NCBI GenBank assembly: GCA_950097015.1
Contig: CATNEN010000026.1
Coordinates: 310,001 to 374,000 of the forward strand
DNA from: Macrostomum hystrix
Lineage: Eukaryota > Animalia > Platyhelminthes
Length of the DNA stretch: 64,000 bases
Direction: 5' to 3'
A program made the position numbers and the translations under genes. How positions within the stretch are numbered: position 1 is the stretch's first letter; each line of letters begins with the position of its first letter. Positions 4,569 through 64,000 of the stretch are shown one piece after another. The notes under the pieces are model-generated. The model was not told where the DNA came from. It worked only from the letters and a program-made list of their open reading frames with translations, and made no database searches.

Positions 4569-4818
4569 ACTCTGAGCACTGGCACTGCATTTGGGGACAG
4601 AAGCCACAGCCAGCGAGGAGGCAATTATGGCCATTTCGCAGACTCCTGAGCACACACGCACACATGCAGATACTGTTCGCAGGCACGCGCTCACAATGGG
4701 TGTACATCTGCCCTGACTTTATGAAACTTTGATTGTGATTTGGAGGTTGGCCCTCAATGGCCAACCGACTGACCTCAACTAAATGTGGCCTCGCGAAAAA
4801 AATCGAACTCAGGGACAT
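4569..4818 (-). mobile_element. SINE family A copy, degenerate, head eroded
   Basis: Shares cagccagcgaggaggcaatt, ctcctgagcacacac, caggcac.cgctcaca and tggaggttggccctcaa with the TSD-flanked copy at 49897-50242. Confidence 0.75.
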
Positions 4819-4985
4819 TGGTGAATAACAGAGGTAGAAAACGCAACTCAATTTCCTTTTATTTGCAAGTCAGCTTTGTATAGTCCCATTACTCGTGCAT
4901 TTATAAGAGAAATCACAAACATGGTCCCGAACTTTGAACATCTTACACCCGAGGACAAAGCGACCTTCTTAACAGTAGAAGACTA

Positions 4986-6064: not shown

Positions 6065-9000
6065 CTAGATGACGGGACCCGTCTTCTTCCCGACTTCGTC
6101 GTCCCACTTGTCGCCCTGTTCGGCAACGTCCGCGCAGTCCCCGACTACTGGCTCCAAGGACAGAAGTTCGGGTTCCGGCTTTTGGGCGGCCTGCACTTTG
6201 TTGTAGGACGGACTTTTCAGCCGGCGCTGAGTGGACATGCGAGGAGAGACGAAGGTATGCGACTAGTGTCAGTTGAAATTGTCGCAAACGTCTGTGTATC
6301 AGCTCACAAAGACTCTGTGTATCAGCTCACAAAGCATGTGTGTATCAGCTCACAAAGCATTTGTGTATCAGCTCACAAAGCATTTGTGTATCAGCTCACA
6401 AAGCATTTGTGTATCAGCTCACAAAGCATTTGTGTATCAGCTCACAAAGCATTTGTGTATCAGCTCACAAAGCATGTGTGTATCAGCTCACAAAGCATGT
6501 GTGTATCAGCTCACAAAGCATTTGTGTATCAGCTCACAAAGCATGTGTGTATCAGCTCACAAAGCATTTGTGTATCAGCTCACAAAGCATTTGTGTATCA
6601 GCTCACAAAGCATTTGTGTATCAGCTCACAAAGCATTTGTGTATCAGCTCACAAAGCATGTGTGTATCAGCTCACAAAGCATTTGTGTATCAGCTCACAA
6701 AGCATTTGTGTATCAGCTCACAAAGCATTTGTGTATCAGCTCACAAAGCATTTGTGTATCAGCTCACAAAGCATGTGTGTATCAGCTCACAAAGCATTTG
6801 TGTATCAGCTCACAAAGCATTTGTGTATCAGCTCACAAAGCATTTGTGTATCAGCTCACAAAGCATTTGTGTATCAGCTCACAAAACATCTGTGTATCAG
6901 CTCACAAAGCATCTGCTCAAAAACTAGCCGATTCTACCCCATCTGCTGGGCTTACCAGCAGGCCTCGCAGGCAGGGCATGATGTACTTCTCCTCTGGCTC
7001 ACTGGCGTTGGCGTCCAACATGTTTGGTAGGCTGACTAGCAGGCCGATCAGCAGACACGAACCCACTCCGATCGGACCGTACCATTGGAATGAGACGCTG
7101 TATAATCCGGCCAGACCGCTGGGCAGTTCGCCCAGGCCGGCTGTCGTTGTTCTCATTGCCGTCATCGTCACTGACGTGAGCGACGCTGTGACATTGAAGT
7201 CTTCTGCGCTGCTGCAGTTGGCGTTGGGCAGCGGCAGCATTACCGGGCCGCCGCTGCTGCCGCCGCTGGCCAATGAGCCGATGCAGATCCAGCCAACGAG
7301 GATCAGCGAGGCCAGCGAGCCGAAAAAGGCGCCCTGCCAGGTGCTCTTCGGCACGCACGCGGCCAGCAGGTAGACGCCGAGGGTGGCCCCGGTGCTGGCA
7401 TTAAGTAGTGAGGCCGATATCTGTGCCAGAGAGACGCCGCTGATGAACGAAGAGGCGAAGGCGATCACCGCGCCCAGTACGCCGTAAGCCACCACTAAAT
7501 AAGTTCAAGTCAGACTGTTTGTATCCTAATTTGACTACTTGCAGTAGAAATATGCGCATCACATCTGCGTGTCAAAAGCAGTACAATCACGATCGAGCTT
7601 TATTACCCAGATTTCAGAATTAGGATAAGAAGAAAAATATTTTACAGTTTAAAATTCGAGTTCCGATCTGCATCACGTCAAAAAGCTCGTAATGGCTTTG
7701 ACTACGACGATTAATTAAAAAAATACAAGGTTTGTACTTTTACAGTTTTAATCTAGCAGTGGCAGAATTCCTTGGCACAGCAATGTCAGACAAAGAAGAT
7801 ATTGGGACACAACATGCATGAACTTCATGGATAATGCAGCTACTGATAGAGCTCATTGAGAATGCTTGTGCTCCAGTGTGAATAGCGGGGTACACGCATC
7901 TCAGTTTACTAAAATGGCGACCAGACTACTAGCTTCCTGCTGCATAGGGCCGCCCCAGGTACTCGTACCGAAGTACTGCAGCATTCTCATGCCATTGTGT
8001 GATGGCTGACCAAGTTTATGAGAGAAGCTACTCAACTCAATTTCTTTTCTAGCTGTTTTATTTCATCTCTTAGTAATCTTTGATAGAGAATATTTTGATT
8101 AGAATATATTATTAACCCTTAAAAGATTGCCTTCTCTCCACCTGGTTTAGGTAGTCTGGTACAGAAATTTATGAAGTCTCGCACTCCAACAAAGCAGCAT
8201 AGGACATTTAGGCAATTACAGAAATCGTAGAAGCAATCTTAGGACTTGCTTTTTGAGAAACTTACAAACTTACAAAATATTCAATGCAAGAAGCTTAAAG
8301 TGAATGAGAACAACCTCAGCTCCACTCACCTAGCCATTTGGTCAACACTGTGGCTTTGTCATCGGACAGTTGTCGATAGGGTTGGATGAAGTCGATGACT
8401 GTGACGGCTGCCTGCGAGTTCAGCACCGTGCTGGTTGTGCTGGAATAGCAATTGCAATGAAAACTGCGTCGTAGGAGACATTGCGTGGATATGCCAATAG
8501 GAAATGAAGAGGATGGGGGCTGGCTGGTACTGGTTGGTATTGCAGGATGGGGCTGGCTGGGACTGGTTGGTATTGCAGGATGGGGCTGGCTGGGACTGGT
8601 TGGTATTGCAGGATGGGGCTGGCTGGGACTGGTTGGTATTGCAGGATGGGGCTGGCTGGGACTGGTTGGTATTGCAGGATGGGGCTGGCTGGGACTGGTT
8701 GGTATTGCAGGATGGGGCTGGTTGGGACTGGTTGGTATTGCAGGATGGGGCTGGCTGGGACTGGTTGGTATTGCAGGATGGGGCTGGCTGGGACTGGTTG
8801 GTATTGCAGGATGGGGCTGGCTGGGACTGGTTGGTATTGCAGGATGGGGCTGGCTGGGACTGGTTGGTATTGCAGGATGGGGCTGGCTGGCACTAATAAG
8901 ACATTTGCATCCGCCTACACTTCCCATGCTCGCACCTGAACGCTCCGCTGAGGATGCAGGCGATGAGTATGCCGCCGAATGACGGAATTTGCAGCTCGTT

Positions 9001-38517: not shown

Positions 38518-41500
38518 ATGACTTCAAAGCAGATGAAGTACTCCTTCCCCTTGTCACCGACTGCGCTCATTGCTAGACTATGCTGGGTCTGTGCGCTGAG
38601 CAGCAGTGCTCAACAGGTCCTGTCTATAGCAGGTGAGACAAATGTACTTTGAACGTGCGGCTAGTGAAGTTGAAGGTCAATATTTGAGCACCGCAATATC
38701 CTGGGGTTTGAGCATCGATATCCTGGGGTTTGAGCAGCGACATCCTGGGGTTTGAGCATCGATATCCTGGGGTTTGAGCATCTGATCCCTGGGGTTTGAG
38801 CAGCGACATCCTGGGGTTTGAGCATCTGATCCCTGGGGTTTGAGCAGCGACATCCTGGGGTTTGAGCATCTGATCCCTGGGGTTTGAGCAGCGACATCCT
38901 GGGGTTTGAGCATCGATATCCTGGGGTTTGAGCATCTGATCCCTGGGGTTTGAGCAGCGATATCCTGGGGTTTGAGCATCGATATCCTGGGGTTTGAGCA
39001 TCTGATCCCTGGGGTTTGAGCAGCGACATCCTGGGGTTTGAGCATCTGATCCCTGGGGTTTGAGCAGCGACATCCTGGGGTTTGAGCATCTGATCCCTGG
39101 GGTGTGAGCATCTGATCCCTGGGGTTTGAGCATCTGATCCCTGGGGTTTGAGCAGCGACATCCTGGGGTTTGAGCATCGATATCCTGGGGTTTGAGCAGC
39201 GACATCCTGGGGTTTGAGCATCTGATCCCTGGGGTTTGAGCAGCGACATCCTGGGGTTTGAGCATCTGATCCCTGGGGTTTGAGCAGCGACATCCTGGGG
39301 TTTGAGCATCGATATCCTGGGGTTTGAGCATCGATATCCTGGGGTTTGAGCATCGATATCCTGGGCTTTGAGCATCGATATCCTGGGGTTTGAGCAGCGA
39401 TATCCTGGGGTTTGAGCATCGATATCCTGGGGTTTGAGCATCGATATCCTGGGGTTTGAGCATCGATATCCTGGGGTTTGAGCATCGACATCCTGGGGTT
39501 TGAGCATCTGATCCCTGGGGTTTGAGCAGCGACATCCTGGGGTTTGAGCATCTGATCCCTGGGGTGTGAGCATCTGATCCCTGGGGTTTGAGCATCTGAT
39601 CCCTGGGGTTTGAGCAGCGACATCCTGGGGTTTGAGCATCTGATCCCTGGGGTTTGAGCAGCGACATCCTGGGGTTTGAGCATCGATATCCTGGGGTTTG
39701 AGCATCGATATCCTGGGGTTTGAGCATCGATATCCTGGGCTTTGAGCATCGATATCCTGGGGTTTGAGCAGCGATATCCTGGGGTTTGAGCATCGATATC
39801 CTGGGGTTTGAGCATCGATATCCTGGGGTTTGAGCATCGATATCCTGGGGTTTGAGCATCGATATCCTGGGGTTTGAGCATCTGATCCTTGGGGTTTGAG
39901 CATCTGATCCTTGGGGTTTGAGCATCTGATCCCTAGGGTTTGAGCATCGATATCCTGGGCTTTGAGCAGCGATATCCTGGGGTTTGAGCATCTGATCCCT
40001 AGGGTTTGAGCATCGATATCCTGGGGTTTGAGCAGCGCTAGTCTGGGGTTTGAGCATCTAATCTGTAGGATTGAAACATTGCAGTACTAGTTAGTACTAA
40101 CTAACTAGGTTGTAACATCGAACTAGTAGCACATATGTTGATTAATAATCTTGAAATCCTTTTAAATTTAACTTTTTTAAATAGTTGTTTGATTTTAACT
40201 GCTACAGGAGTTTATAATTTAAGAACCCTTGCAAGGCGCATCAATTTAGTCTTATCTTTTTTGCTGAATAATTTCTGAACTCACTCGCTCTTTCATTTCA
40301 ACATTTTCTTAATTTCTGATAGCATGAGTTTGTGCAACGAGTCCAGAAAGTCCGCTGTACGTGCTTTAAAGTGCAAGCAAAGCGCTTTTTATAGACTGAT
40401 ATTTTCATCTGTACTATTATATTCCACCATTCCTACTTGCAGTAGCAGCACATGAAAAAGAAGCGAATATTCAAAAACCTGGCGCTGCAGTTCCAAGCGG
40501 AAATTGGACAGAATCGAACCGAGAGCGTGATGCAGTGAATGCGGCTGCCCGAGTGGTTGAAATCCGATTCTACATACAGAAGATCCACAGCATGGTATGC
40601 ATGCGTCACAATGTTCCCTTGATTTGCCTTGTCACTTACAGATTTGAGTGTCTCAATTTTATCACTCTGTGCTATTGCAGAATGGTAACAGCCAGACCTT
40701 TTACAGTAGCGGAGTTCTGTCATTGGTAAGCAGAGTTTTGTTTTGTTGCTGACCGACAACTGACAATGGCGTGTCAATCATTGAAAACGGCTAGTTCTTT
40801 ATTAATGATTGACAGTTGACATTGTCAGACCAGTGATTGACAGTTGACATTGTCAGACCAGTGATTGACAGTTGACATTGTCAGACTCCAGGGCTCCAGG
40901 GATCCAAATAGCTGAAACGCTGTCAAACAAATAGCTTCCCCGCCTGCACGCAGCGCTGGAACTTGTCCGCCGAGTCACCGCAGTCGCCAGACTCCTGGCA
41001 GCCGCGGGTGGCTCTGTGGAACGCCGAGCTGGCAGATCCGGATCGGCAGGCGCTGCAGCCGCAGCGTCGTCTACGCCTCGAGCGGCATCCATCAACGGGC
41101 CGGCCTGTCGCCGCCATCGCCGAGCACATCCTGCAGCCGGTGGGGCACTGCGATCACGTGAACTTCGTGCACTTCCCCAAGGACCGGCACAACTGCAGCT
41201 TCCAGGTGGGCCGGGGAGTGCTAATTTCGCTGCTTGCTGTGGCTTGCGGGAGGTTTCAAATACATGTCCCAGCCTCTGCTACACACAGCTTTGAGTATGA
41301 AAGACGTCTTTGTAAATTAACTATATTAATTTGAAAATCTCTATTCATCATGTACTATCAGGGCTCCATCGTTTGTTGATAGATGTTGGAAGAGCTCCAT
41401 CGTTTGTTGATAGATGTTGGAAGAGCTACATCATTTGTTGATAGATGTTGGAAGAGCTACATCGTTTGTTGATAGATGTTGGAAGAGCAACATCGTTTGT

Positions 41501-43432
41501 TGATAGATGTTGGAAGAGCTACATCATTTGTTGATAGATGTTGGAAGAGCTCCATCGTTTGTTGATAGATGTTGGAAGAGCTACATCGTTTGTTGATAGA
41601 TGTTGGAAGAGCAACATCGTTTGTTGATAGATGTTGGAAGAGCTACATCATTTGTTGATAGATGTTGGAAGAGCTCCATCGTTTGTTGATAGATGTTGGA
41701 AGAGCTACATCGTTTGTTGATAGATGTTGGAAGAGCAACATCGTTTGTTGATAGATGTTGGAAGAGCTACATCATTTGTTGATAGATGTTGGAAGAGCTA
41801 CATCATTTGTTGATAGATGTTGGAAGAGCTCCATCGTTTGTTGATTGTGGGTGAGTGGCAGAGCGCATAACGCGCCTGCCTCTCGCACCAAGGTCCCTGA
41901 GCTCGATTCCGCGGCGAGGCCACATTCATTTGGGGCGCAGACGCGAAAAGAAGGCTTGGGGGCTTGTCGTGCAATTTTCGTCCTTGAGGGCCAACCTCCA
42001 AGGTACAGTGAGAGCGTACACTGTCTGTCGATGAGAAAGTCAGGGCAGATGTACACACCTGTGTGAGCGTGTGCCTGCGTACGGTATCCGTGTGCGTGTG
42101 TGCACAGGAGTCAGTAAAATGGGCAGCATTTCCTTCTCGCTGGCTGCAGGTTTAGAGTCATTAATTGCCTGCAGCCCTCCTGCAATTAGAATTACTATTA
42201 GTATAATTAAATCCTTTGTTATTAGGGATTGGAAGAGCTCTGTGCCTTTCTTATTCTTATTTTTGTAAATCACTTTGTCAGTGTTTTTTCTATTCAAAGT
42301 GTAATTTTAAAAAAATCCTCCATTCGATTTCGTCTTCTCTCCTCGCGATCCCAGGTGCTATTCGCCGACAGCCTGACTGAGCTAGAAGCCCGCTTCCAGC
42401 TGCCGACCGCAGGCGATGGCCCTGCCGGCTACCTTGTCGGTTGCGACGGCGGCTGGCGTGTACTGTCCGTAGCCGACAACGTGTCCGATATGGCCTGGCC
42501 GGGCGGGTACCGTCGGTCGGTGTACACCTTTGCTGTTAGCGTTCGACGCGAACACCGCTACTACCTGGTTAGCATGCTGCTGCCAGTGTTGTACCTGGTG
42601 CTGCTGCTGTTCATGGTGTTCTCACTGCCCGTGTCCGACGGGCCGGAAAAAATTCAGCTGTCACTGACGGTACTGCTGGCCTTCACAGTCTACCTGATGC
42701 TCACAGACCAGATGATGCCCAAGATTAAGCAGGTGCCAGCGCTTAGTAAGTATTGGCCTTCAAATACTTATAGGGAGGCTCAGTAGTTATGGCCATGGAC
42801 TTCTGACCGAGATGTCTGACAGGATGATGCCCTGACAGGATGATGCCCTGACAGGATGATGCCCTGACAGGATGATGCCCTGACAGGATGATGCCCTGAC
42901 AGGATGATGCCCTGACAGGATGATGCCCTGACAGGATGATGCCCTGACAGGATGACGCCCTGACAGTGTCGTGACAGGATGATGCCCTGACAGGATGGTA
43001 CTTTGACAGGATTTTTTACAAACATAATGATTTTTGTAATTTTACATAATGATGTTTTTACCTGTGCACTAATAATCTGAAATCGTAAATGAACTTCTTC
43101 GAACTAAAAAATCTAAAAATGCTTTTGAAACAATCATAGGCAACTTCCTGAACAGTCTGATGCTAATTGCGACTCTCTACGTGTGTGCCACAGCGGCCAC
43201 CTGCCGGCTAATCCGATCAGGTGAGGGCTGCGGCAGCACCGGCGGCAGCGGCAACTCAACCCAGAGGTCGCTATGGCAGCCTCTTCGGACGGCGCTGCGT
43301 GCCGTTGGCGCCGACGCCGATTGTCCGCAGGCGATGAAGCGACTGGCAACGCGAATCGACCGGGTCCTGATGACTGTCGGCGTGTTGGCCGTCTCCGTGC
43401 TGTTCGTGGTGCTTGTGCTGCCGCTGCTCTGA
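38518..43432 (+). CDS. Divergent Cys-loop ligand-gated ion channel subunit (nAChR-like, non-alpha)
   Basis: Exons 38518-38632 (signal peptide), 40491-40594, 40954-41205, 42355-42745, 43140-43432; the model between 40594 and 40954 is uncertain. Features: WQPRVALWN, Cys-loop CDHVNFVHFPKDRHNC, pre-M1 VRREHRYY, M1 LLP, M2 GPEKIQLSLTVLLAFTVYL, M4 RIDRV. Confidence 0.82.
38690..40057. repeat. 22-bp minisatellite, ~62 copies, LGIC intron 1
   Basis: Unit CCTGGGGTTTGAGCATCGATAT with interspersed variants (CATCTGAT, CAGCGACA, CAGCGATA). Confidence 0.97.
40805..40885. repeat. 28-bp tandem repeat x3
   Basis: Unit TGATTGACAGTTGACATTGTCAGACCAG. Confidence 0.88.
41364..41845. repeat. 31-bp minisatellite, ~15.5 copies, LGIC intron
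   Basis: Unit CTCCATCGTTTGTTGATAGATGTTGGAAGAG with CTAC/CAAC variants. Confidence 0.96.
41849..42210 (+). mobile_element. SINE family A, near full length
   Basis: tRNA-like head GGGTGAGTGGCAGAGCG...AAGGTCCCTGAGCTCGATTCC, body, and 3' end GCAGCCCTCCTGCAATTA with an ATT-like tail. Confidence 0.85.
42817..43005. repeat. 16-bp tandem repeat, ~11 copies, last LGIC intron
   Basis: Unit CTGACAGGATGATGCC. Confidence 0.94.
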
Positions 43433-60174: not shown

Positions 60175-61327
60175 ATGGCGGGGTCACTCTCGCCGTCGGC
60201 TTCCCTGCTGTGGTGGCGCGGAGACAATCAGACAGTAGAGAACAGCAGCAGCAACCAGAAGCCGCGCAGTCGCGTTACTGATGGTCTCGGTAGTAGCAAT
60301 GAGCTCAACGACATTGCACGCACCGGAGCTGGCCGCAACCGAGACCCAGTGTTCTGCTGCTGCGGGCCCGGCCGGAAGCGCTACCTGATCGCTCTGCTCT
60401 GCTCACTTGGCCTCACAGTTGTCATAGGCATGCGTGCGGAGATGGTGGCCATCATGGACTACCTGAACCGTAAGGCGAACCTCAATGCGACAGCAGCAGC
60501 GGCAGCCGCAGCCGCAGCTCGCTCTGGCGGCTCTGGTGGAATTTTTCAGCCGAACGCCCACCGCCAGATGCCCTGGCAAAATACGGCCAACGACCTCATA
60601 GAAAATTCCGTGTTTATCGGTTACTTGGTGGCCAGCCCGGTCGGCGGCTACCTGACGGTGCATCACGACAGCTCCCTCCTGTTGGGCTGCTCCGTGGCGC
60701 TCACCTGTGGCCTAAATCTGTTCCTGCCACTGGTGACACAGATAGCGGCTGACATCTCGGCCTCAATCGCCGTCATCGTGGTGCTTCGACTGTTGCAGGG
60801 CCTGGCTGAAGGCTGCCTTATTCCTGCCGTATTCGGCGTGATGCGCTTCTGGGGTCCGGAAGGCGAGCGCTCCTCGCTGTTGTGCTTCGCTGTCATCGGA
60901 GTTTCCTTGGGCCCACTGATCGGCCTGCCCGTCTGCCAAGAAATCGAGAATCACTGGGGCTGGGCGGTGGTGTTCTACATCTACGCAAACATCGGACTGA
61001 TCTGGTGCATCTTCTGGTGGCGTCTGATCGACGAGAAGCCGCTGAAGGACAAGAATCTGGGCAAGCAGGAGCGGCAGTACCTGGAGACCAATATCACCAA
61101 GAAGGTGCTCTATGCCCACCGCCGGCTGCGAGTGCCCTGGAAGGAGATCTTCAAGTCGCGCCAAGTGTACGCCATATTCTTCACATACGCGGCGGACGAC
61201 TGGACCTTCCAGATCAGCTCTGTGTGCATGCAGAGCTACTACCATCAGATGTACAAGACCAACGTCGGTCACACCATCTTCCTGCTGTCCTTTCCATTTC
61301 TTGCCAGGTCGCTATTCGTTCCAATAG
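60175..61327 (+). CDS. SLC17 / VGLUT-like MFS transporter, first coding exon (TM1-TM8); downstream exons not seen in the window
   Basis: ATG at 60175 in good context, preceded by an in-frame stop and an acceptor at 60119. Colinear with VGLUT: KRYLIA..LG....GMR, SVFIGYLV...GGY, RLLQGLAEG, WGPEGERSSL, GWAVVFYIY, ERQYLE, VPWKEIF, WTF, VPIG. Donor GTGAGG at 61328. Confidence 0.88.
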
Positions 61328-62594
61328 GTGAGGTTTATTTGTGCACTCATTCCTTCGTTTCCACACACTGACGTCCTGATTTTACCTGAACCTGCCCAGG
61401 TAAATACATATAAAGTGGCGCTGGTGGAAAAAGCTACAGCAGGTCATGTGACAGGCAGTACGAGGAGTCTGGCCCGGCAAACCCAAACAACTGACTGGTC
61501 CATTGTGTCGCTGCTTTGTTGACAGTCGGGCCCAAAAGGGCAGACAAAGTTGATGAAAATAATGAGGAGATAGAAGTTGAATGATCTCACCGCTCTCCAG
61601 CCCTTCTATCTCTTAGACCACTGAGCCACATTTGTTCTCCTCGTGAGGAGAACTCGCCCTCTCTCACCTCTCGGAAATTTGGTCGCACGGTAAAAGCAGC
61701 CAGAAGGGCAACCCGCCAACCCCTGGTTGTTGAGTCGTGGACTCCGCTCCCACTTAAAGGGCCGCTAAGTATATAAGAACCGCCTCGTTGTACTCCGCCG
61801 GTTCCACTTCCAGAAGCCACTGCACATATGCTACCTTTTCATCCTGTCTTCTCTCTCAGACTCCATCGACGCCCCTCCCCCCGCTTGCTCATCCTTGGCC
61901 TCGCTTGTCTCCCCCTCATTGCCAACTGTTTTCCCTCGTCATATCCCGCCCACAGTGCCAACACTGACTTTGTATTTGCGGCCCGTTTTGCCAGCAGTGT
62001 ATAGCTCCGCCATATAGACACAATTTGGTCAACAGAAATCCTCTGGCATTCGCTTTTTATTTTCTCAGTCCAATTTTTATCTAGTCTTTTTCTTTACCCA
62101 TCCACCGTTTCATTAGGCTTTCAGTGCGCTCTCGCACTGCCCTGAGCGTGGCTGTGTACTTTTCATCAATCCGAGGAAGCTTAAAGAGGGATTTGAGAGG
62201 CGCCGCTCATTCTTTGTTTTAAAACTGTGCGCATTACAGCTTACCATTCTAGGGAGAAGAAAAATATCTAGAAAAACAGCGAATCAACAGGAAAACACAC
62301 ACGGAAGCGAGTCCGTGATTATATTCTGCTTTGCTCTGCTCTCTGACTTAGCTTAAAATAAGCCAACGGGGCCTCTGACGATGGGAGTACTGGGGAATAT
62401 GTAAAACAGCCTGCACTGATTGCAGCTGCTGTGCTGCATTCCGTTACTTTCTTTCTAGTTACTCGTCATGTTCCAGCTCACTCTCTCGGCATCACTTTCT
62501 TGTTCCTTAAACCATTTATGAGTTTTCCAATCATGTTCCTATGCCTTCTCATTCTCTTTTACCTCAATATTTATTTTCTCACCTTTCTCCTCTC

Positions 62595-62960
62595 CTTGTC
62601 TATCATCTCTCCTTTCCTTGTCTATCATCTCTGTCCTCTCCTTGTCTATCATCTCTCCTCTACTTGTCTATCATCTCTCCTCTCCTTGTCTATCATCTCT
62701 CCTCTCCTTGTCTATCATCTCTCCTCTCCTTGTCTATCATCTCTCCTCTACTTGTCTATCATCTCTCCTCTCCTTGTCTATCATCTCTCCTCTACTTGTC
62801 TATCATCTCTCCTCTACTTGTCTATCATCTCTCCTCTACTTGTCTATCATCTCTCCTCTACTTGTCTATCATCTCTCCTCTACTTGTCTATCATCTCTCC
62901 TCTACTTGTCTATCATCTCTCCTCTACTTGTCTATCATCTCTCCTCTACTTGTCTATCTA
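62595..62960. repeat. 22-bp pyrimidine-rich minisatellite, ~16 copies
   Basis: Unit CTTGTCTATCATCTCTCCTCTA. Confidence 0.95.
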
Positions 62961-64000
62961 ATCTCCTCTCCCAGTCGAAAATATATTCTTTCCTAGTCTC
63001 ATCTCTCTCCTCACCTTATCTCCCATTTTTCCTCCCCATATCTTACATCTCTTCTTACATTCTCAGGTCTGTATTTAGCCCTTCATACCACCTTTGTTGA
63101 TCTTGTTTTCCTAATATTCTTATTGTTTTAGTTTCCATCATTGCATGACCACACTGTCTCCTTCTTAACCTGTTTAACTGTCTTAGAGTCATTACCCTGC
63201 TTCTTTTCCGAAACAAGTTGGGAAGATTCGAAATCAGAATTTTATTCGATGCCGCGTTTTATCAAAACCAATGTTAGCCTCTCAAATTTTGACCGCACAG
63301 ATAGTTTTGTGAACACAAGTCTGCAGGAAGGAGACAACATTCAGGCAGCCCGCGATAGTGATGGGAGAGTAAGAATTGTGATCGTAAGTAGACCAGGATG
63401 CTCAGAGTAAGCCCTGTTGAAGCATTAGCCAGGCACTAGTGTACTCGCTAAACTGCATTTTACGACCAAATGCTTAATGGGATTAGATAGCTACATTGGA
63501 GGGGAGTGCATGAAGGTATCCTCTATACTCAGACCTGGGCTCAGACTTCTTATATATTTTAAAATAGGCGTTCGCTTCTGCGACAAGAAGACAAAGAGGC
63601 GGCGGCAACGGCGGTGGCTGCTGCTGCTGCTGGGATGGCCTTACTTAGTACGGGGCTGGGGAGGCCATCTGAATTATGCAAGGGCCTCTGCAGCAAAAAC
63701 GCTAGAGCCGACCCGCCGGCCCCTGGTGGGCTGAGAACTCGCGTTCGAGCTTTTGTAGCGCGGGGCACTTGGCGGCGGGCAGATAAATGGAATGAGAACA
63801 GACAGACGGACAGACGGCAGTCCAGGAGGGCCGGATAGAGGAGAAAAAGAGGCAATGTGAGACACTGTGGTAAAGGATAGGATCTTTGGGATCCTCGCAG
63901 AGTCCGCTCAGTTGCAGCCACTCTCTTATTTACGTCGTAAGATGGCGGCAACTTTGAGGTTTTTCAAACCCATCCCTCAAGCAGTGCCTTTTTTTCTCAT

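What the first reader, a model, noticed from the sequence alone, without database searches (positions are those of the whole stretch)
60175..61327. VGLUT-like transporter with a charge-reversed substrate site (Arg322-equivalent is Asp)
Seen: the exon aligns without gaps around key helices of mammalian VGLUT2. TM1 GMR keeps the R88-equivalent and RLLQGLAEG keeps R184/E191. In TM7, VYAIFFTYAADDWTFQ aligns to VYAIIVANFCRSWTFY, putting Asp (61195-61197) at R322 and a second Asp next to it. The H128 position is Glu (60601-60603), and Y195 and Y327 are Ile and Gln. Established: R88 and R322 coordinate the two carboxylates of glutamate in VGLUT2. Inference: keeping R88 while gaining acidic residues predicts a non-glutamate, probably zwitterionic or cationic cargo, such as an omega-amino acid or amine. 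That would be a possible new vesicular transporter specificity.
Basis: partly seen in the sequence, partly recalled or inferred. Interest (0 to 1): 0.75.

Follow-up and report, generated by a model that had tools for sequence, protein, structure and literature searches.

The report
Flatworm VGLUT-derived transporter, acidic pocket
This is the first exon of a real, expressed flatworm gene from a flatworm-only offshoot of the vesicular glutamate transporter family, in which the arginine that makes those transporters glutamate-specific is replaced by two aspartates, so it probably carries something other than glutamate, but nobody has tested what.

Summary
Window 60175-61327 (+) is exon 1 (384 codons plus 1 base, GT donor at 61328) of a four-exon SLC17 gene in a Macrostomum-like flatworm genome. 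Exons 2-4 lie just past the window end.

- **Expression:** spliced contigs from two public runs carry all three predicted exon joints exactly.
- **Residue mapping:** a HMMER alignment to rat VGLUT2 gives R88=R87, H128=E143, R184=R205, E191=E212, Y195=I216, Y223=L245, R322=D341, S323=D342 and Y327=Q346.
- **Conservation:** the Asp-Asp motif is invariant in every flatworm orthologue that covers TM7 (about 40: Macrostomum, trematodes, cestodes, monogeneans). It is absent from every other protein among the 150 best representatives of a 1.84-billion-protein search.
- **Phylogeny:** trees put this "DD" clade on the VGLUT side of SLC17, on a very long stem. Its sister is a second flatworm clade that keeps the Arg.
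- **Paralogues:** the same genome also has canonical VGLUT genes with the Arg.

VGLUT2 E396, which shares a polar network with R322, is Lys in all DD members, so the change is a reciprocal charge swap. An acid at the 322 position also occurs in uncharacterised sialin-like SLC17s. GABA is unlikely, because parasitic flatworms lack GABA pathways. The substrate remains unknown.

The parts
60175..61327 (+). Exon 1 of the SLC17 'DD-clade' gene: 384 codons plus the first base of a split Gly codon. It encodes the N-terminus, TM1-TM6, the cytoplasmic loop, TM7 and TM8.
   Evidence: ORF. Pfam MFS_1 6.6e-27. PDB sialin/VGLUT2 E about 1e-40. Spliced contig joint at this exon end.
60355..60363 (+). Cys-Cys-Cys (C61-C63) just before TM1. 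C61 and C63 align with VGLUT2 C62 and C64.
   Evidence: Alignment. C62/C64 are palmitoylated in VGLUT2 according to bioRxiv 10.1101/2022.07.26.501550. Function here is inferred only.
60433..60441 (+). TM1 codons R87-A88-E89. R87 corresponds to VGLUT2 R88 (kept). E89 replaces N90.
   Evidence: R and E are kept in nearly all orthologues that cover TM1 (one has Lys for R87). E89 is shared with the sister RN/EE clade.
60601..60603 (+). E143 at the VGLUT2 H128 position (TM2).
   Evidence: Invariant in the clade. Also Glu in the RN/EE clade.
60787..60810 (+). TM4 motif R205...E212, corresponding to VGLUT2 R184 and E191 (both kept).
60820..60822 (+). I216 at the VGLUT2 Y195 position. This Tyr of the R322 carboxyl site is lost.
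60907..60909 (+). L245 at the VGLUT2 Y223 position. A second Tyr of the R322 carboxyl site is lost.
61195..61200 (+). D341-D342 (GAC GAC) at VGLUT2 R322-S323 in TM7. This is the core of the finding.
   Evidence: Invariant in every orthologue that covers TM7 (about 40 of 43) and in 4 own-genome paralogues. Absent from all other top-150 representatives.
61210..61212 (+). Q346 at the VGLUT2 Y327 position.
   Evidence: Shared with the RN/EE clade.
61328..64000 (+). Intron 1, phase 1, with GT at 61328-61329. It runs past the window end. The acceptor AG and exon 2 start at window-equivalent 64255, which is L025 4756.
   Evidence: Joint 1828|4756 in L025 coordinates is present in a contig of run X2.
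62586..62969 (.). Tandem repeat of 22 bp x 17.4 copies inside intron 1.

Best explanation
**What it is.** The stretch is exon 1 of an intact, transcribed four-exon gene of about 556 codons. Exons 2-4 lie 2.9-6.4 kb downstream, beyond the window. The gene encodes a 12-helix SLC17 transporter.

**Descent.** It belongs to a flatworm-restricted clade, here called DD. That clade arose by duplication on the VGLUT side of the SLC17 family, via an intermediate flatworm clade (RN/EE) that still has the TM7 Arg. The DD clade diverged fast at its origin and has been held almost unchanged since.

**What is kept.** The general SLC17 machinery is intact: the TM1 Arg with Y150, the TM4 Arg/Glu pair, and S423 and N450 of the C-domain.

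**What is rebuilt.** The second, VGLUT-specific carboxylate site is replaced:
- R322 to D and S323 to D.
- Y195 to I and Y223 to L. Y327, which belongs to the R88 half-site, becomes Q.
- N431 to A and H434 to V.
- E396 to K, a reciprocal swap with R322.
- H128 to E and N90 to E add two more acids.

Counting formal charges at these positions, the cavity goes from about +1/+2 in VGLUT to about -2.

**Inferred, not shown.** The protein is a working transporter that no longer recognises glutamate as VGLUT does. Most likely it binds a ligand with one carboxylate (at R87/Y150) and a positively charged or H-bond-donating group (at D341/D342). Alternatively it uses the extra carboxylates as proton sites for H+-coupled transport. 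Its membrane location (synaptic vesicle or other) is unknown.
For: **Gene and expression**
- ORF, donor and exon model.
- All three GT..AG joints occur in contigs of runs X1/X2 with no mismatches. There is no contig cover over the unique parts of the introns, as expected of RNA.
- dN/dS against two paralogues is 0.04-0.10.

**Fold**
- Pfam MFS_1.
- An AF2 model of the Spirometra orthologue has pLDDT 85.4 and pTM 0.85.
- Its best structural matches are VGLUT2 and sialin, with target-normalised TM-scores of 0.86-0.92 for the five best.

**Residue mapping**
- HMMER against 7t3o/7t3n; 20 sites across 96 full-length SLC17s.
- The pair (322, 396) is (R,E) in 12 VGLUT-type representatives (canonical plus close nematode and insect kin), (D,K) in 15 of 15 DD members and (R,M) in three of four RN/EE members.

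**Roles of the VGLUT2 residues**
- bioRxiv 10.1101/2022.07.26.501550.

**Exclusivity**
- In an exhaustive phmmer search of 1.84e9 representatives, the top 7 hits (260-493 bits) were all DD-clade representatives, the five that cover TM7 carrying the motif. The next hit scored 194 bits.
- No other sequence in the top 150 has D-D.

**Phylogeny**
- DD clade 100/100. DD plus RN/EE 100/99. The sialin-like group is split off at 100/99. The DD stem is 1.4-2.0 substitutions per site against inner branches of 0.04-0.6.

**Canonical VGLUT in the same genome**
- Three multi-exon loci are 49-67% identical per exon to fish VGLUT1 and have TM7 ...ANFARSWSFY.
Against: - No functional or localisation data exist for any member.
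- The K at the E396 position may neutralise D341. It could even take over carboxylate binding, leaving a dicarboxylate site in rearranged form.
- I could not measure distances in the model, because no coordinates are returned.
- Acidic residues at the 322 position occur in sialin-like SLC17s that are presumed anion carriers.
- In DgoT and sialin, cavity carboxylates are known as proton-coupling sites rather than cation sites (my own knowledge, not read in a paper here).
- Databases name these proteins VGLUT. A tapeworm 'vglut' in-situ marker that labels neurons might be this gene, which I could not resolve.
- The runs that show splicing are not on record as RNA.
Confidence: 0.6

Rival explanations
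1. It is still a vesicular transporter for glutamate or another acidic amino acid. The R322/E396 pair has merely swapped polarity (D341/K). The Lys on TM9 now holds the second carboxylate, and the other changes tune regulation by Cl- and pH rather than specificity.
For: - The (R,E) to (D,K) covariation is perfect in the sample.
- E396, S423 and R322 share one network in VGLUT2.
- R87, Y150, F345, S423 and N450 are kept.
- It descends from the VGLUT side and keeps the VGLUT-type Cys-x-Cys.
- Databases and tapeworm studies treat a flatworm 'vglut' as a neuronal marker.
Against: - Three of the four Tyr that hold the carboxyls are lost (Y195, Y223, Y327). N431 and H128 are also lost.
- A second Asp and two extra Glu make the cavity acidic.
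- Canonical VGLUT genes with the Arg coexist in this genome, so there is no need for a second glutamate carrier.
- The very long stem followed by near-invariance fits a change of function.
Confidence: 0.13
2. It is an H+-coupled carrier of a monovalent organic anion, working as sialin or DgoT do. It may sit in lysosomal or plasma membranes rather than synaptic vesicles. The TM7 Asp pair and the extra Glu residues would act as proton-binding or relay sites, not as ligands for a cationic group.
For: - The TM7 Arg is absent from all non-VGLUT SLC17s, which carry single-charged anions.
- Glu or Asp at the 322 position recurs in sialin-like SLC17s of insects, Trichuris and amphioxus.
- R87 and R205/E212, the generic anion and proton machinery, are intact.
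- The model is as similar to sialin as to VGLUT2.
Against: - The formal cavity charge of about -2 is unusual for an anion carrier.
- The D-D plus K combination is unique to this clade.
- The gene descends from the VGLUT side, not the sialin side.
Confidence: 0.22
3. It is a non-transporting or degenerate paralogue, for example a regulatory or 'receptor-like' MFS protein or a channel-only protein.
For: Many substrate-site residues are replaced. Other notes on this genome report rewired transporter paralogues (unchecked).
Against: - Cavity residues are conserved to an extreme degree across free-living and parasitic flatworms.
- dN/dS is 0.04-0.10.
- The gene is spliced and expressed.
- The predicted 12-helix fold is intact with pLDDT above 90 in the helices.
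- The replaced residues are themselves invariant, which argues for a new site and not a lost one.
Confidence: 0.05

Closest known systems
Vesicular glutamate transporters VGLUT1-3 (SLC17A6-8), e.g. rat VGLUT2, PDB 7t3o/8sbe
   Same: - 12-TM MFS fold (target TM-score 0.86-0.90).
- Same side of the SLC17 tree.
- Kept residues: TM1 Arg, Y135, the TM4 R184/E191 pair, F326, S423, N450 and the Cys-x-Cys before TM1.
- The C-terminal half is much closer to VGLUT2 than to sialin.
   Different: - R322 to D, S323 to D and E396 to K.
- H128 to E and N90 to E.
- Y195 to I, Y223 to L and Y327 to Q.
- N431 to A, H434 to V, and R213 (cytoplasmic gate) to S.
- About 27-29% identity.
- Canonical VGLUTs exist separately in the same genome.
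Flatworm 'RN/EE' SLC17 clade (own-genome loci on C28, C39, C25; Macrostomum lignano PAA55277.1; Cichlidogyrus KAL3311167.1)
   Same: - Sister or parent group (100/99).
- Shares E at N90 and E at H128 (all members), Q at Y327, and L at Y223 in most members.
- Flatworm-only as far as seen.
   Different: - Keeps R at 322, N at 323, Y195, H199, N319 and H434.
- Has Met in most members (Thr in one), not Lys, at 396.
- About 35% identity.
- It looks like the intermediate step.
Sialin (SLC17A5), PDB 8dwi/8u3d
   Same: - Equal sequence similarity on exon 1 and equal fold similarity.
- Also lacks the TM7 Arg.
   Different: - Sialin has Tyr-Asn at the 322/323 positions and Leu at 128.
- It lies on the other side of the SLC17 split (100/99).
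Sialin-like invertebrate SLC17s with ...ENWGFY... in TM7 (e.g. Anoplophora XP_023310014.1, Trichuris A0A5S6QPJ8)
   Same: A single acidic residue at the R322 position. All are uncharacterised.
   Different: - Glu-Asn, not Asp-Asp.
- Gln, not Lys, at 396.
- Leu at 128 and Asn at 90.
- They sit in the sialin-side clade.
SLC18 vesicular amine transporters (VMAT, VAChT): functional analogy only
   Same: MFS fold. In SLC18, membrane-embedded Asp residues serve proton antiport and binding of a cationic substrate (my own knowledge). A cavity lined with carboxylates is what the DD clade resembles.
   Different: Only distant MFS relatives (E about 1e-3; about 12-13% identity). No shared motifs.

Membership tests
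SLC17 / anion:cation symporter family of the MFS | 12-helix MFS fold with significant similarity to SLC17 members | tested here: met
   Pfam MFS_1 6.6e-27. Sialin and VGLUT2 E about 1e-40. The AF2 model of an orthologue matches VGLUT2 and sialin best.
SLC17 / anion:cation symporter family of the MFS | Conserved TM1 Arg (VGLUT2 R88) and TM4 Arg/Glu pair (R184/E191) | tested here: met
   R87, R205 and E212. They are conserved in nearly all orthologues that cover them.
VGLUT (SLC17A6-8) subfamily | Falls with VGLUTs rather than with sialin/NPT-like SLC17s in a tree | tested here: met
   The sialin-like group is split off at 100/99, and DD plus RN/EE lie on the VGLUT side. The root is not inferred and the branch is long, so it is unresolved whether the clade is nested in or sister to canonical VGLUTs.
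VGLUT (SLC17A6-8) subfamily | TM7 Arg (R322), found only in VGLUTs, which binds one carboxyl of glutamate | tested here: not met
   Asp at 61195-61197. The feature is stated in bioRxiv 10.1101/2022.07.26.501550.
VGLUT (SLC17A6-8) subfamily | Tyr residues completing the two carboxyl sites (Y135, Y195, Y223, Y327) | tested here: not met
   Only Y135 is kept (Y150). The others are I216, L245 and Q346.
VGLUT (SLC17A6-8) subfamily | H128 (supports Cl- binding at R184) and E396 (network with S423 and R322) | tested here: not met
   E143. Lys at 396 in exon 2 and in 15 of 15 orthologues.
VGLUT (SLC17A6-8) subfamily | Membrane-potential-driven, Cl-activated glutamate uptake into synaptic vesicles | not testable with these tools
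   Needs expression and a transport assay.
Sialin (SLC17A5) | Groups with sialin in a tree, with the sialin TM7 motif (...HFSYNWTFY...) | tested here: not met
   It lies on the other side of the 100/99 split. The motif differs.

The most novel reading that the evidence does not exclude
The DD clade is a flatworm-specific vesicular transporter that evolved from a VGLUT. It would load a non-anionic transmitter or signal: a zwitterionic amino acid or a carboxyl-bearing or plain amine. Glycine or beta-alanine-type compounds are examples, but not GABA. Loading would be by proton antiport. This would be the first SLC17 member with a non-anionic cargo, and a transmitter-loading step present in all parasitic flatworms but absent from their hosts.
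Probability: 0.25. Interest if true: 0.85.

Novelty: new variant of a known kind. Interest (0 to 1): 0.58.

Why it matters
- **Transporter biology.** Every characterised SLC17 carries anions. A VGLUT-derived branch with an acid-lined, charge-swapped pocket, conserved across free-living and parasitic flatworms, is a natural experiment on what sets substrate charge in this fold. It is also a candidate for an unassigned vesicular or organellar transport activity.
- **Annotation.** Schistosoma, Echinococcus, Taenia, Paragonimus, Fasciolopsis and Hymenolepis proteins filed as 'vesicular glutamate transporter' belong to this clade and lack the glutamate-specific Arg. Using them as glutamatergic markers or inferring glutamate loading from them may be wrong.
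- **Parasitology.** The clade is present in all sampled parasitic flatworm groups, and no host orthologue was seen among the 150 best hits of a 1.84-billion-protein search. If it proves essential, that would make it of pharmacological interest.

Tried and rejected
- **Tapeworm 'vglut' probe.** I tried to find out whether the Hymenolepis microstoma in-situ marker 'vglut' (HmN_000748900; primers in the supplement of PMC10614006) is the DD-clade gene. Peptides translated from the primers match neither the 385-aa H. microstoma model P0018 nor any other collected protein. This stays unresolved. The source paper (Preza 2018) is not held.
- **Literature.** Searches for SLC17 or VGLUT in flatworms, Macrostomum or Schistosoma found no description of this clade.
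- **ESM Atlas.** The feature search gave only generic SLC17/MFS clusters.
- **Earlier notes of this scan.** There was nothing on this gene, only SLC1 notes and a Cys-loop note.
- **Sequencing runs.** The look-up of sequencing runs listed no run on record as RNA. The two runs of unknown kind nevertheless carry the spliced form.
- **No joined protein.** Exon 1 was searched by reference, exons 2-4 were read separately, and a natural full-length orthologue (P0013) was folded instead.
- **No 3D distances.** The structure tool returns no coordinates, so I could not measure D341/D342 to Lys distances or cavity exposure.
- **Canonical VGLUT in parasites.** I could not test whether trematodes and cestodes also have a canonical VGLUT. 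No suitable query or collection was available.
- **GABA rejected.** GABA is not the likely conserved cargo. A trematode study found no GABA synthesis genes or transporters and no GABA receptors in that species or other flatworms, and says this fits earlier genome analyses of parasitic flatworms.
- **Pseudogene rejected.**
- **'Closer to VGLUT than to sialin' on exon 1 alone rejected.**
Full report
**1. What is in the sequence**

The window is G000:C26:310001-374000 of a 220-Mb, 42-contig eukaryotic assembly. The best protein match is a Macrostomum lignano protein at 79% identity, so the genome is a Macrostomum-like flatworm.

An open frame starts at ATG 60175 and runs to 61371. The stretch therefore holds 384 codons plus the first base of a split Gly codon.

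- GAC GAC at 61195-61200 (D341, D342)
- GAA at 60601-60603 (E143)
- CGT at 60433-60435 (R87)
- CGA at 60787-60789 and GAA at 60808-60810 (R205, E212)
- ATT at 60820-60822 (I216)
- CAG at 61210-61212 (Q346)

**2. The whole gene and its expression**

The C-terminal half of orthologues matches the assembly just beyond the window. I fetched C26:369500-379499 as L025, where window coordinate = L025 coordinate + 59499. From it I read four exons:

| Exon | L025 coordinates | Note |
|---|---|---|
| 1 | 676-1828 | = window 60175-61327 |
| 2 | 4756-4920 | outside the window |
| 3 | 6191-6298 | outside the window |
| 4 | 7682-7926 | ends in stop TAG |

All introns are phase 1 with GT..AG ends, and the total is about 556 codons. 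Only exon 1 lies in the window.

Logan contigs of two public runs (X1, X2; kind not on record) carry the three joints: 1828|4756, 4920|6191 and 6298|7682. There are no mismatches, and there is no cover over the unique parts of the introns. This is the pattern of spliced RNA, so the gene is transcribed and my exon model is right. The caveat is that the runs are not labelled as RNA.

Three close paralogues exist on contigs C1, C24 and C38, at 87, 84 and about 75% protein identity. All keep the TM7 motif. dN/dS for exon 1 is 0.037 (window vs C1) and 0.10 (vs C24), with dS near 1. Selection is strongly purifying.

**3. Family and residue mapping**

Pfam finds MFS_1 (6.6e-27). Against solved structures, exon 1 matches sialin and VGLUT2 equally well: 1.5e-41 and 2.4e-40, and 4e-39 and 2e-39. 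The C-terminal half of an orthologue is clearly nearer VGLUT2 (7e-38) than sialin (4e-25).

The HMMER alignment to 7t3o/7t3n (native rat VGLUT2 numbering) has no gaps in TM1, TM2, TM4 or TM7-TM11. It gives these equivalences:

| VGLUT2 | This gene / DD clade | Status |
|---|---|---|
| C62, C64 | C61, C63 | kept |
| R88 | R87 | kept |
| N90 | E89 | changed |
| H128 | E143 | changed |
| Y135 | Y150 | kept |
| R184 | R205 | kept |
| E191 | E212 | kept |
| Y195 | I216 | changed |
| H199 | F220 | changed |
| R213 | S234 | changed |
| Y223 | L245 | changed |
| N319 | Y338 | changed |
| R322 | D341 | changed |
| S323 | D342 | changed |
| F326 | F345 | kept |
| Y327 | Q346 | changed |
| E396 | Lys (exon 2 reads ...GFGLKA...) | changed |
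| S423 | Ser | kept |
| N431 | Ala | changed |
| H434 | Val | changed |
| R440 | Asn or Lys | changed |
| N450 | Asn | kept |

The VGLUT2 structure preprint (bioRxiv 10.1101/2022.07.26.501550) states the following:
- R88, Y135 and Y327 hold one carboxyl.
- R322, Y195 and Y223 hold the other.
- S323, N431 and N450 form an outer polar layer near the amine.
- E396, S423 and R322 form a switching network.
- The TM7 Arg occurs only in VGLUTs within SLC17.

So one half-site (R87, Y150) survives here and the VGLUT-specific half-site is rebuilt.

**4. Conservation and exclusivity**

The word-index search found 37 relatives, all flatworm where named: Macrostomum, trematodes, cestodes and monogeneans. 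Many are annotated 'vesicular glutamate transporter'.

In the 43 collected family members, D-D, W-T-F-Q and E143 are unchanged wherever the residue is covered, and R87, E89, R205 and E212 nearly so (one member has Lys for R87). Three sequences of unknown source read YSADDWTFQ instead of YAADDWTFQ.

The exhaustive HMMER search of 1.84 billion representatives shows a sharp break. Seven representatives score 260-493 bits; all are DD-clade representatives, and the five that cover TM7 carry the motif. The next scores 194 bits at 35% identity, and the rest score below 175 bits. None of the other sequences in the top 150 has Asp-Asp at these positions.

**5. Where it sits in SLC17**

A 112-row quick tree and a 55-row careful tree (LG+C20) agree on these points:
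- The DD clade is supported at 100/100.
- DD plus a second flatworm clade is supported at 100/99.
- The sialin-like group is split off from everything VGLUT-like at 100/99.

The second clade I call RN/EE. Its members are M. lignano, the monogenean Cichlidogyrus, one unknown source, and own-genome loci on C28, C39 and C25. It shares E89 and E143 with the DD clade, plus Q346 and, in most members, L245. It keeps R322, Y195, N319 and H434, and most members have Met at 396 (one has Thr). It looks like the intermediate step.

The DD stem is 1.4-2.0 substitutions per site, while branches inside the clade are 0.04-0.6. That is rapid change followed by near-stasis. The root is not inferred and the branch is long, so whether DD plus RN/EE is nested in or sister to canonical VGLUTs is open.

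The same genome has at least three canonical VGLUT loci (C12, C41, C2). They are 49-67% identical per exon to fish VGLUT1 and read ...ANFARSWSFY... in TM7. The DD gene is therefore an addition to the ordinary VGLUT, not a replacement for it.

**6.

*(a) The charge reversal is reciprocal.* Across 96 full-length SLC17 proteins, the pair (322, 396) is:
- (R,E) in 12 VGLUT-type representatives (canonical plus close nematode and insect kin)
- (D,K) in 15 of 15 DD members
- (R,M) in three of four RN/EE members
- (E,Q) in six sialin-like proteins

E396 and R322 both contact S423 in VGLUT2. The new Lys is therefore probably near D341 and may pair with it, or may even reach the pocket.

*(b) An acid at position 322 is not unique.* Several sialin-like SLC17s have Glu or Asp there. 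They come from beetles, stick insects, wasps, crickets, Trichuris and amphioxus. All are uncharacterised and lie on the sialin side of the tree.

What is unique to this clade is the combination of D-D, Lys-396, E143 and E89.

**7. Fold**

An AlphaFold2 model of the full-length Spirometra orthologue (P0013, 60% identical, built with a 96-sequence alignment) has pLDDT 85.4 and pTM 0.85, with helices above 90. Its best PDB matches are VGLUT2 and sialin, with target-normalised TM-scores of 0.86-0.92 for the five best, and DgoT comes next. The fold is intact. No coordinates are returned, so I could not measure side-chain geometry.

**8. How it most likely works**

*Shown:* this is an intact, expressed, selected SLC17 transporter gene of VGLUT descent with a rebuilt C-domain half-site.

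*Inferred:* I counted formal charges at the cavity positions.
- VGLUT has R88, R184, R322, E191 and E396, plus H128, for about +1 to +2.
- RN/EE comes to about 0.
- DD has R87, R205 and Lys against E89, E143, E212, D341 and D342, for about -2.

With three of the four carboxyl-holding Tyr gone, VGLUT-type recognition of a dicarboxylate is unlikely. I put 'no longer a VGLUT-type glutamate carrier' at about 0.6.

The kept R87/Y150 site suggests the ligand still has one carboxylate. The Asp pair then suggests a cationic or H-bond-donor group at the other end (a zwitterion). The rival view is that the carboxylates are proton-coupling sites of an H+-coupled monoanion carrier, as in sialin and DgoT (established knowledge of those proteins, not tested here).

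E143 next to R205 probably abolishes the Cl- site that protonated H128 supports in VGLUT (bioRxiv 10.1101/2024.09.06.609381).

A trematode transcriptome study found no GABA synthesis genes or transporters, and found no GABA receptors in that species or other flatworms. It says this fits earlier genome analyses of parasitic flatworms (PMC10728431). Yet those worms keep this gene almost unchanged.

The kept Cys-x-Cys before TM1, palmitoylated in VGLUT2, is weak support for VGLUT-like trafficking. Localisation is otherwise unknown.

**9. Known or new**

I found no paper that describes this clade. Its members sit in databases under the name VGLUT. It passes the SLC17 membership tests. It fails the VGLUT functional signature (R322, H128, E396 and three of four Tyr). 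I therefore file it as a new variant within SLC17, not as a VGLUT.

A tapeworm 'vglut' probe used as a glutamatergic marker may or may not be this gene.

**10. Verdict**

Interest is moderate to fairly high. Divergent SLC17 paralogues are common in invertebrates. This one stands out because it is phylum-wide, highly conserved, derived from a VGLUT, mis-annotated in parasite genomes, and directly testable.

Noticed in passing
window 38518-43432: An earlier first-stage note of this scan (s1-253564) reports an orphan Cys-loop ligand-gated channel subunit with an atypical binding site about 17 kb upstream of this orphan transporter gene. Two atypical neurotransmission-type genes as neighbours may be coincidence. 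I did not examine it.
   Followed up: no
window 62586-62969: A 22-bp unit repeated 17.4 times (96% matches) inside intron 1 of the gene. Further repeat-like, proline/histidine-rich open frames lie in introns 2 and 3 (L025 6315-7008 and 7357-7680).
   Followed up: partly
G000:C28:240461-241567, C39:13772810-13773976 and C25:8369500-8371500 (L026, L027, L028): A second flatworm-only SLC17 clade ('RN/EE'). It keeps the VGLUT TM7 Arg but has Glu at the N90 and H128 positions, Gln at Y327 and Met at E396. It is the apparent intermediate between canonical VGLUT and the DD clade, and is also uncharacterised.
   Followed up: partly
G000:C12:766799-769114, C41:3593525-3596929 and C2:3696626-3699345 (L029-L031): Three multi-exon canonical VGLUT loci with identical TM7 peptides (...ANFARSWSFY...). 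A fourth, more divergent copy lies at C2:3688270-3690147. The three or four copies of each SLC17 type are in line with large-scale gene or genome duplication in this lineage.
   Followed up: partly
L025 1772-1814 (window 61271-61313), run X2 record 7: A contig with 4 mismatches in 43 bases continues into a different exon-2 sequence (...FVPIGGLLAD...). It probably comes from a transcribed paralogue of the same clade.
   Followed up: no
L025 4100-4133 (window 63599-63632): Several high-depth contigs of both runs (one 4312 nt long) match only a 34-bp GC-rich patch in intron 1 and run on into unrelated sequence. This is likely a short repeat or low-complexity element shared with abundant transcripts.
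   Followed up: no
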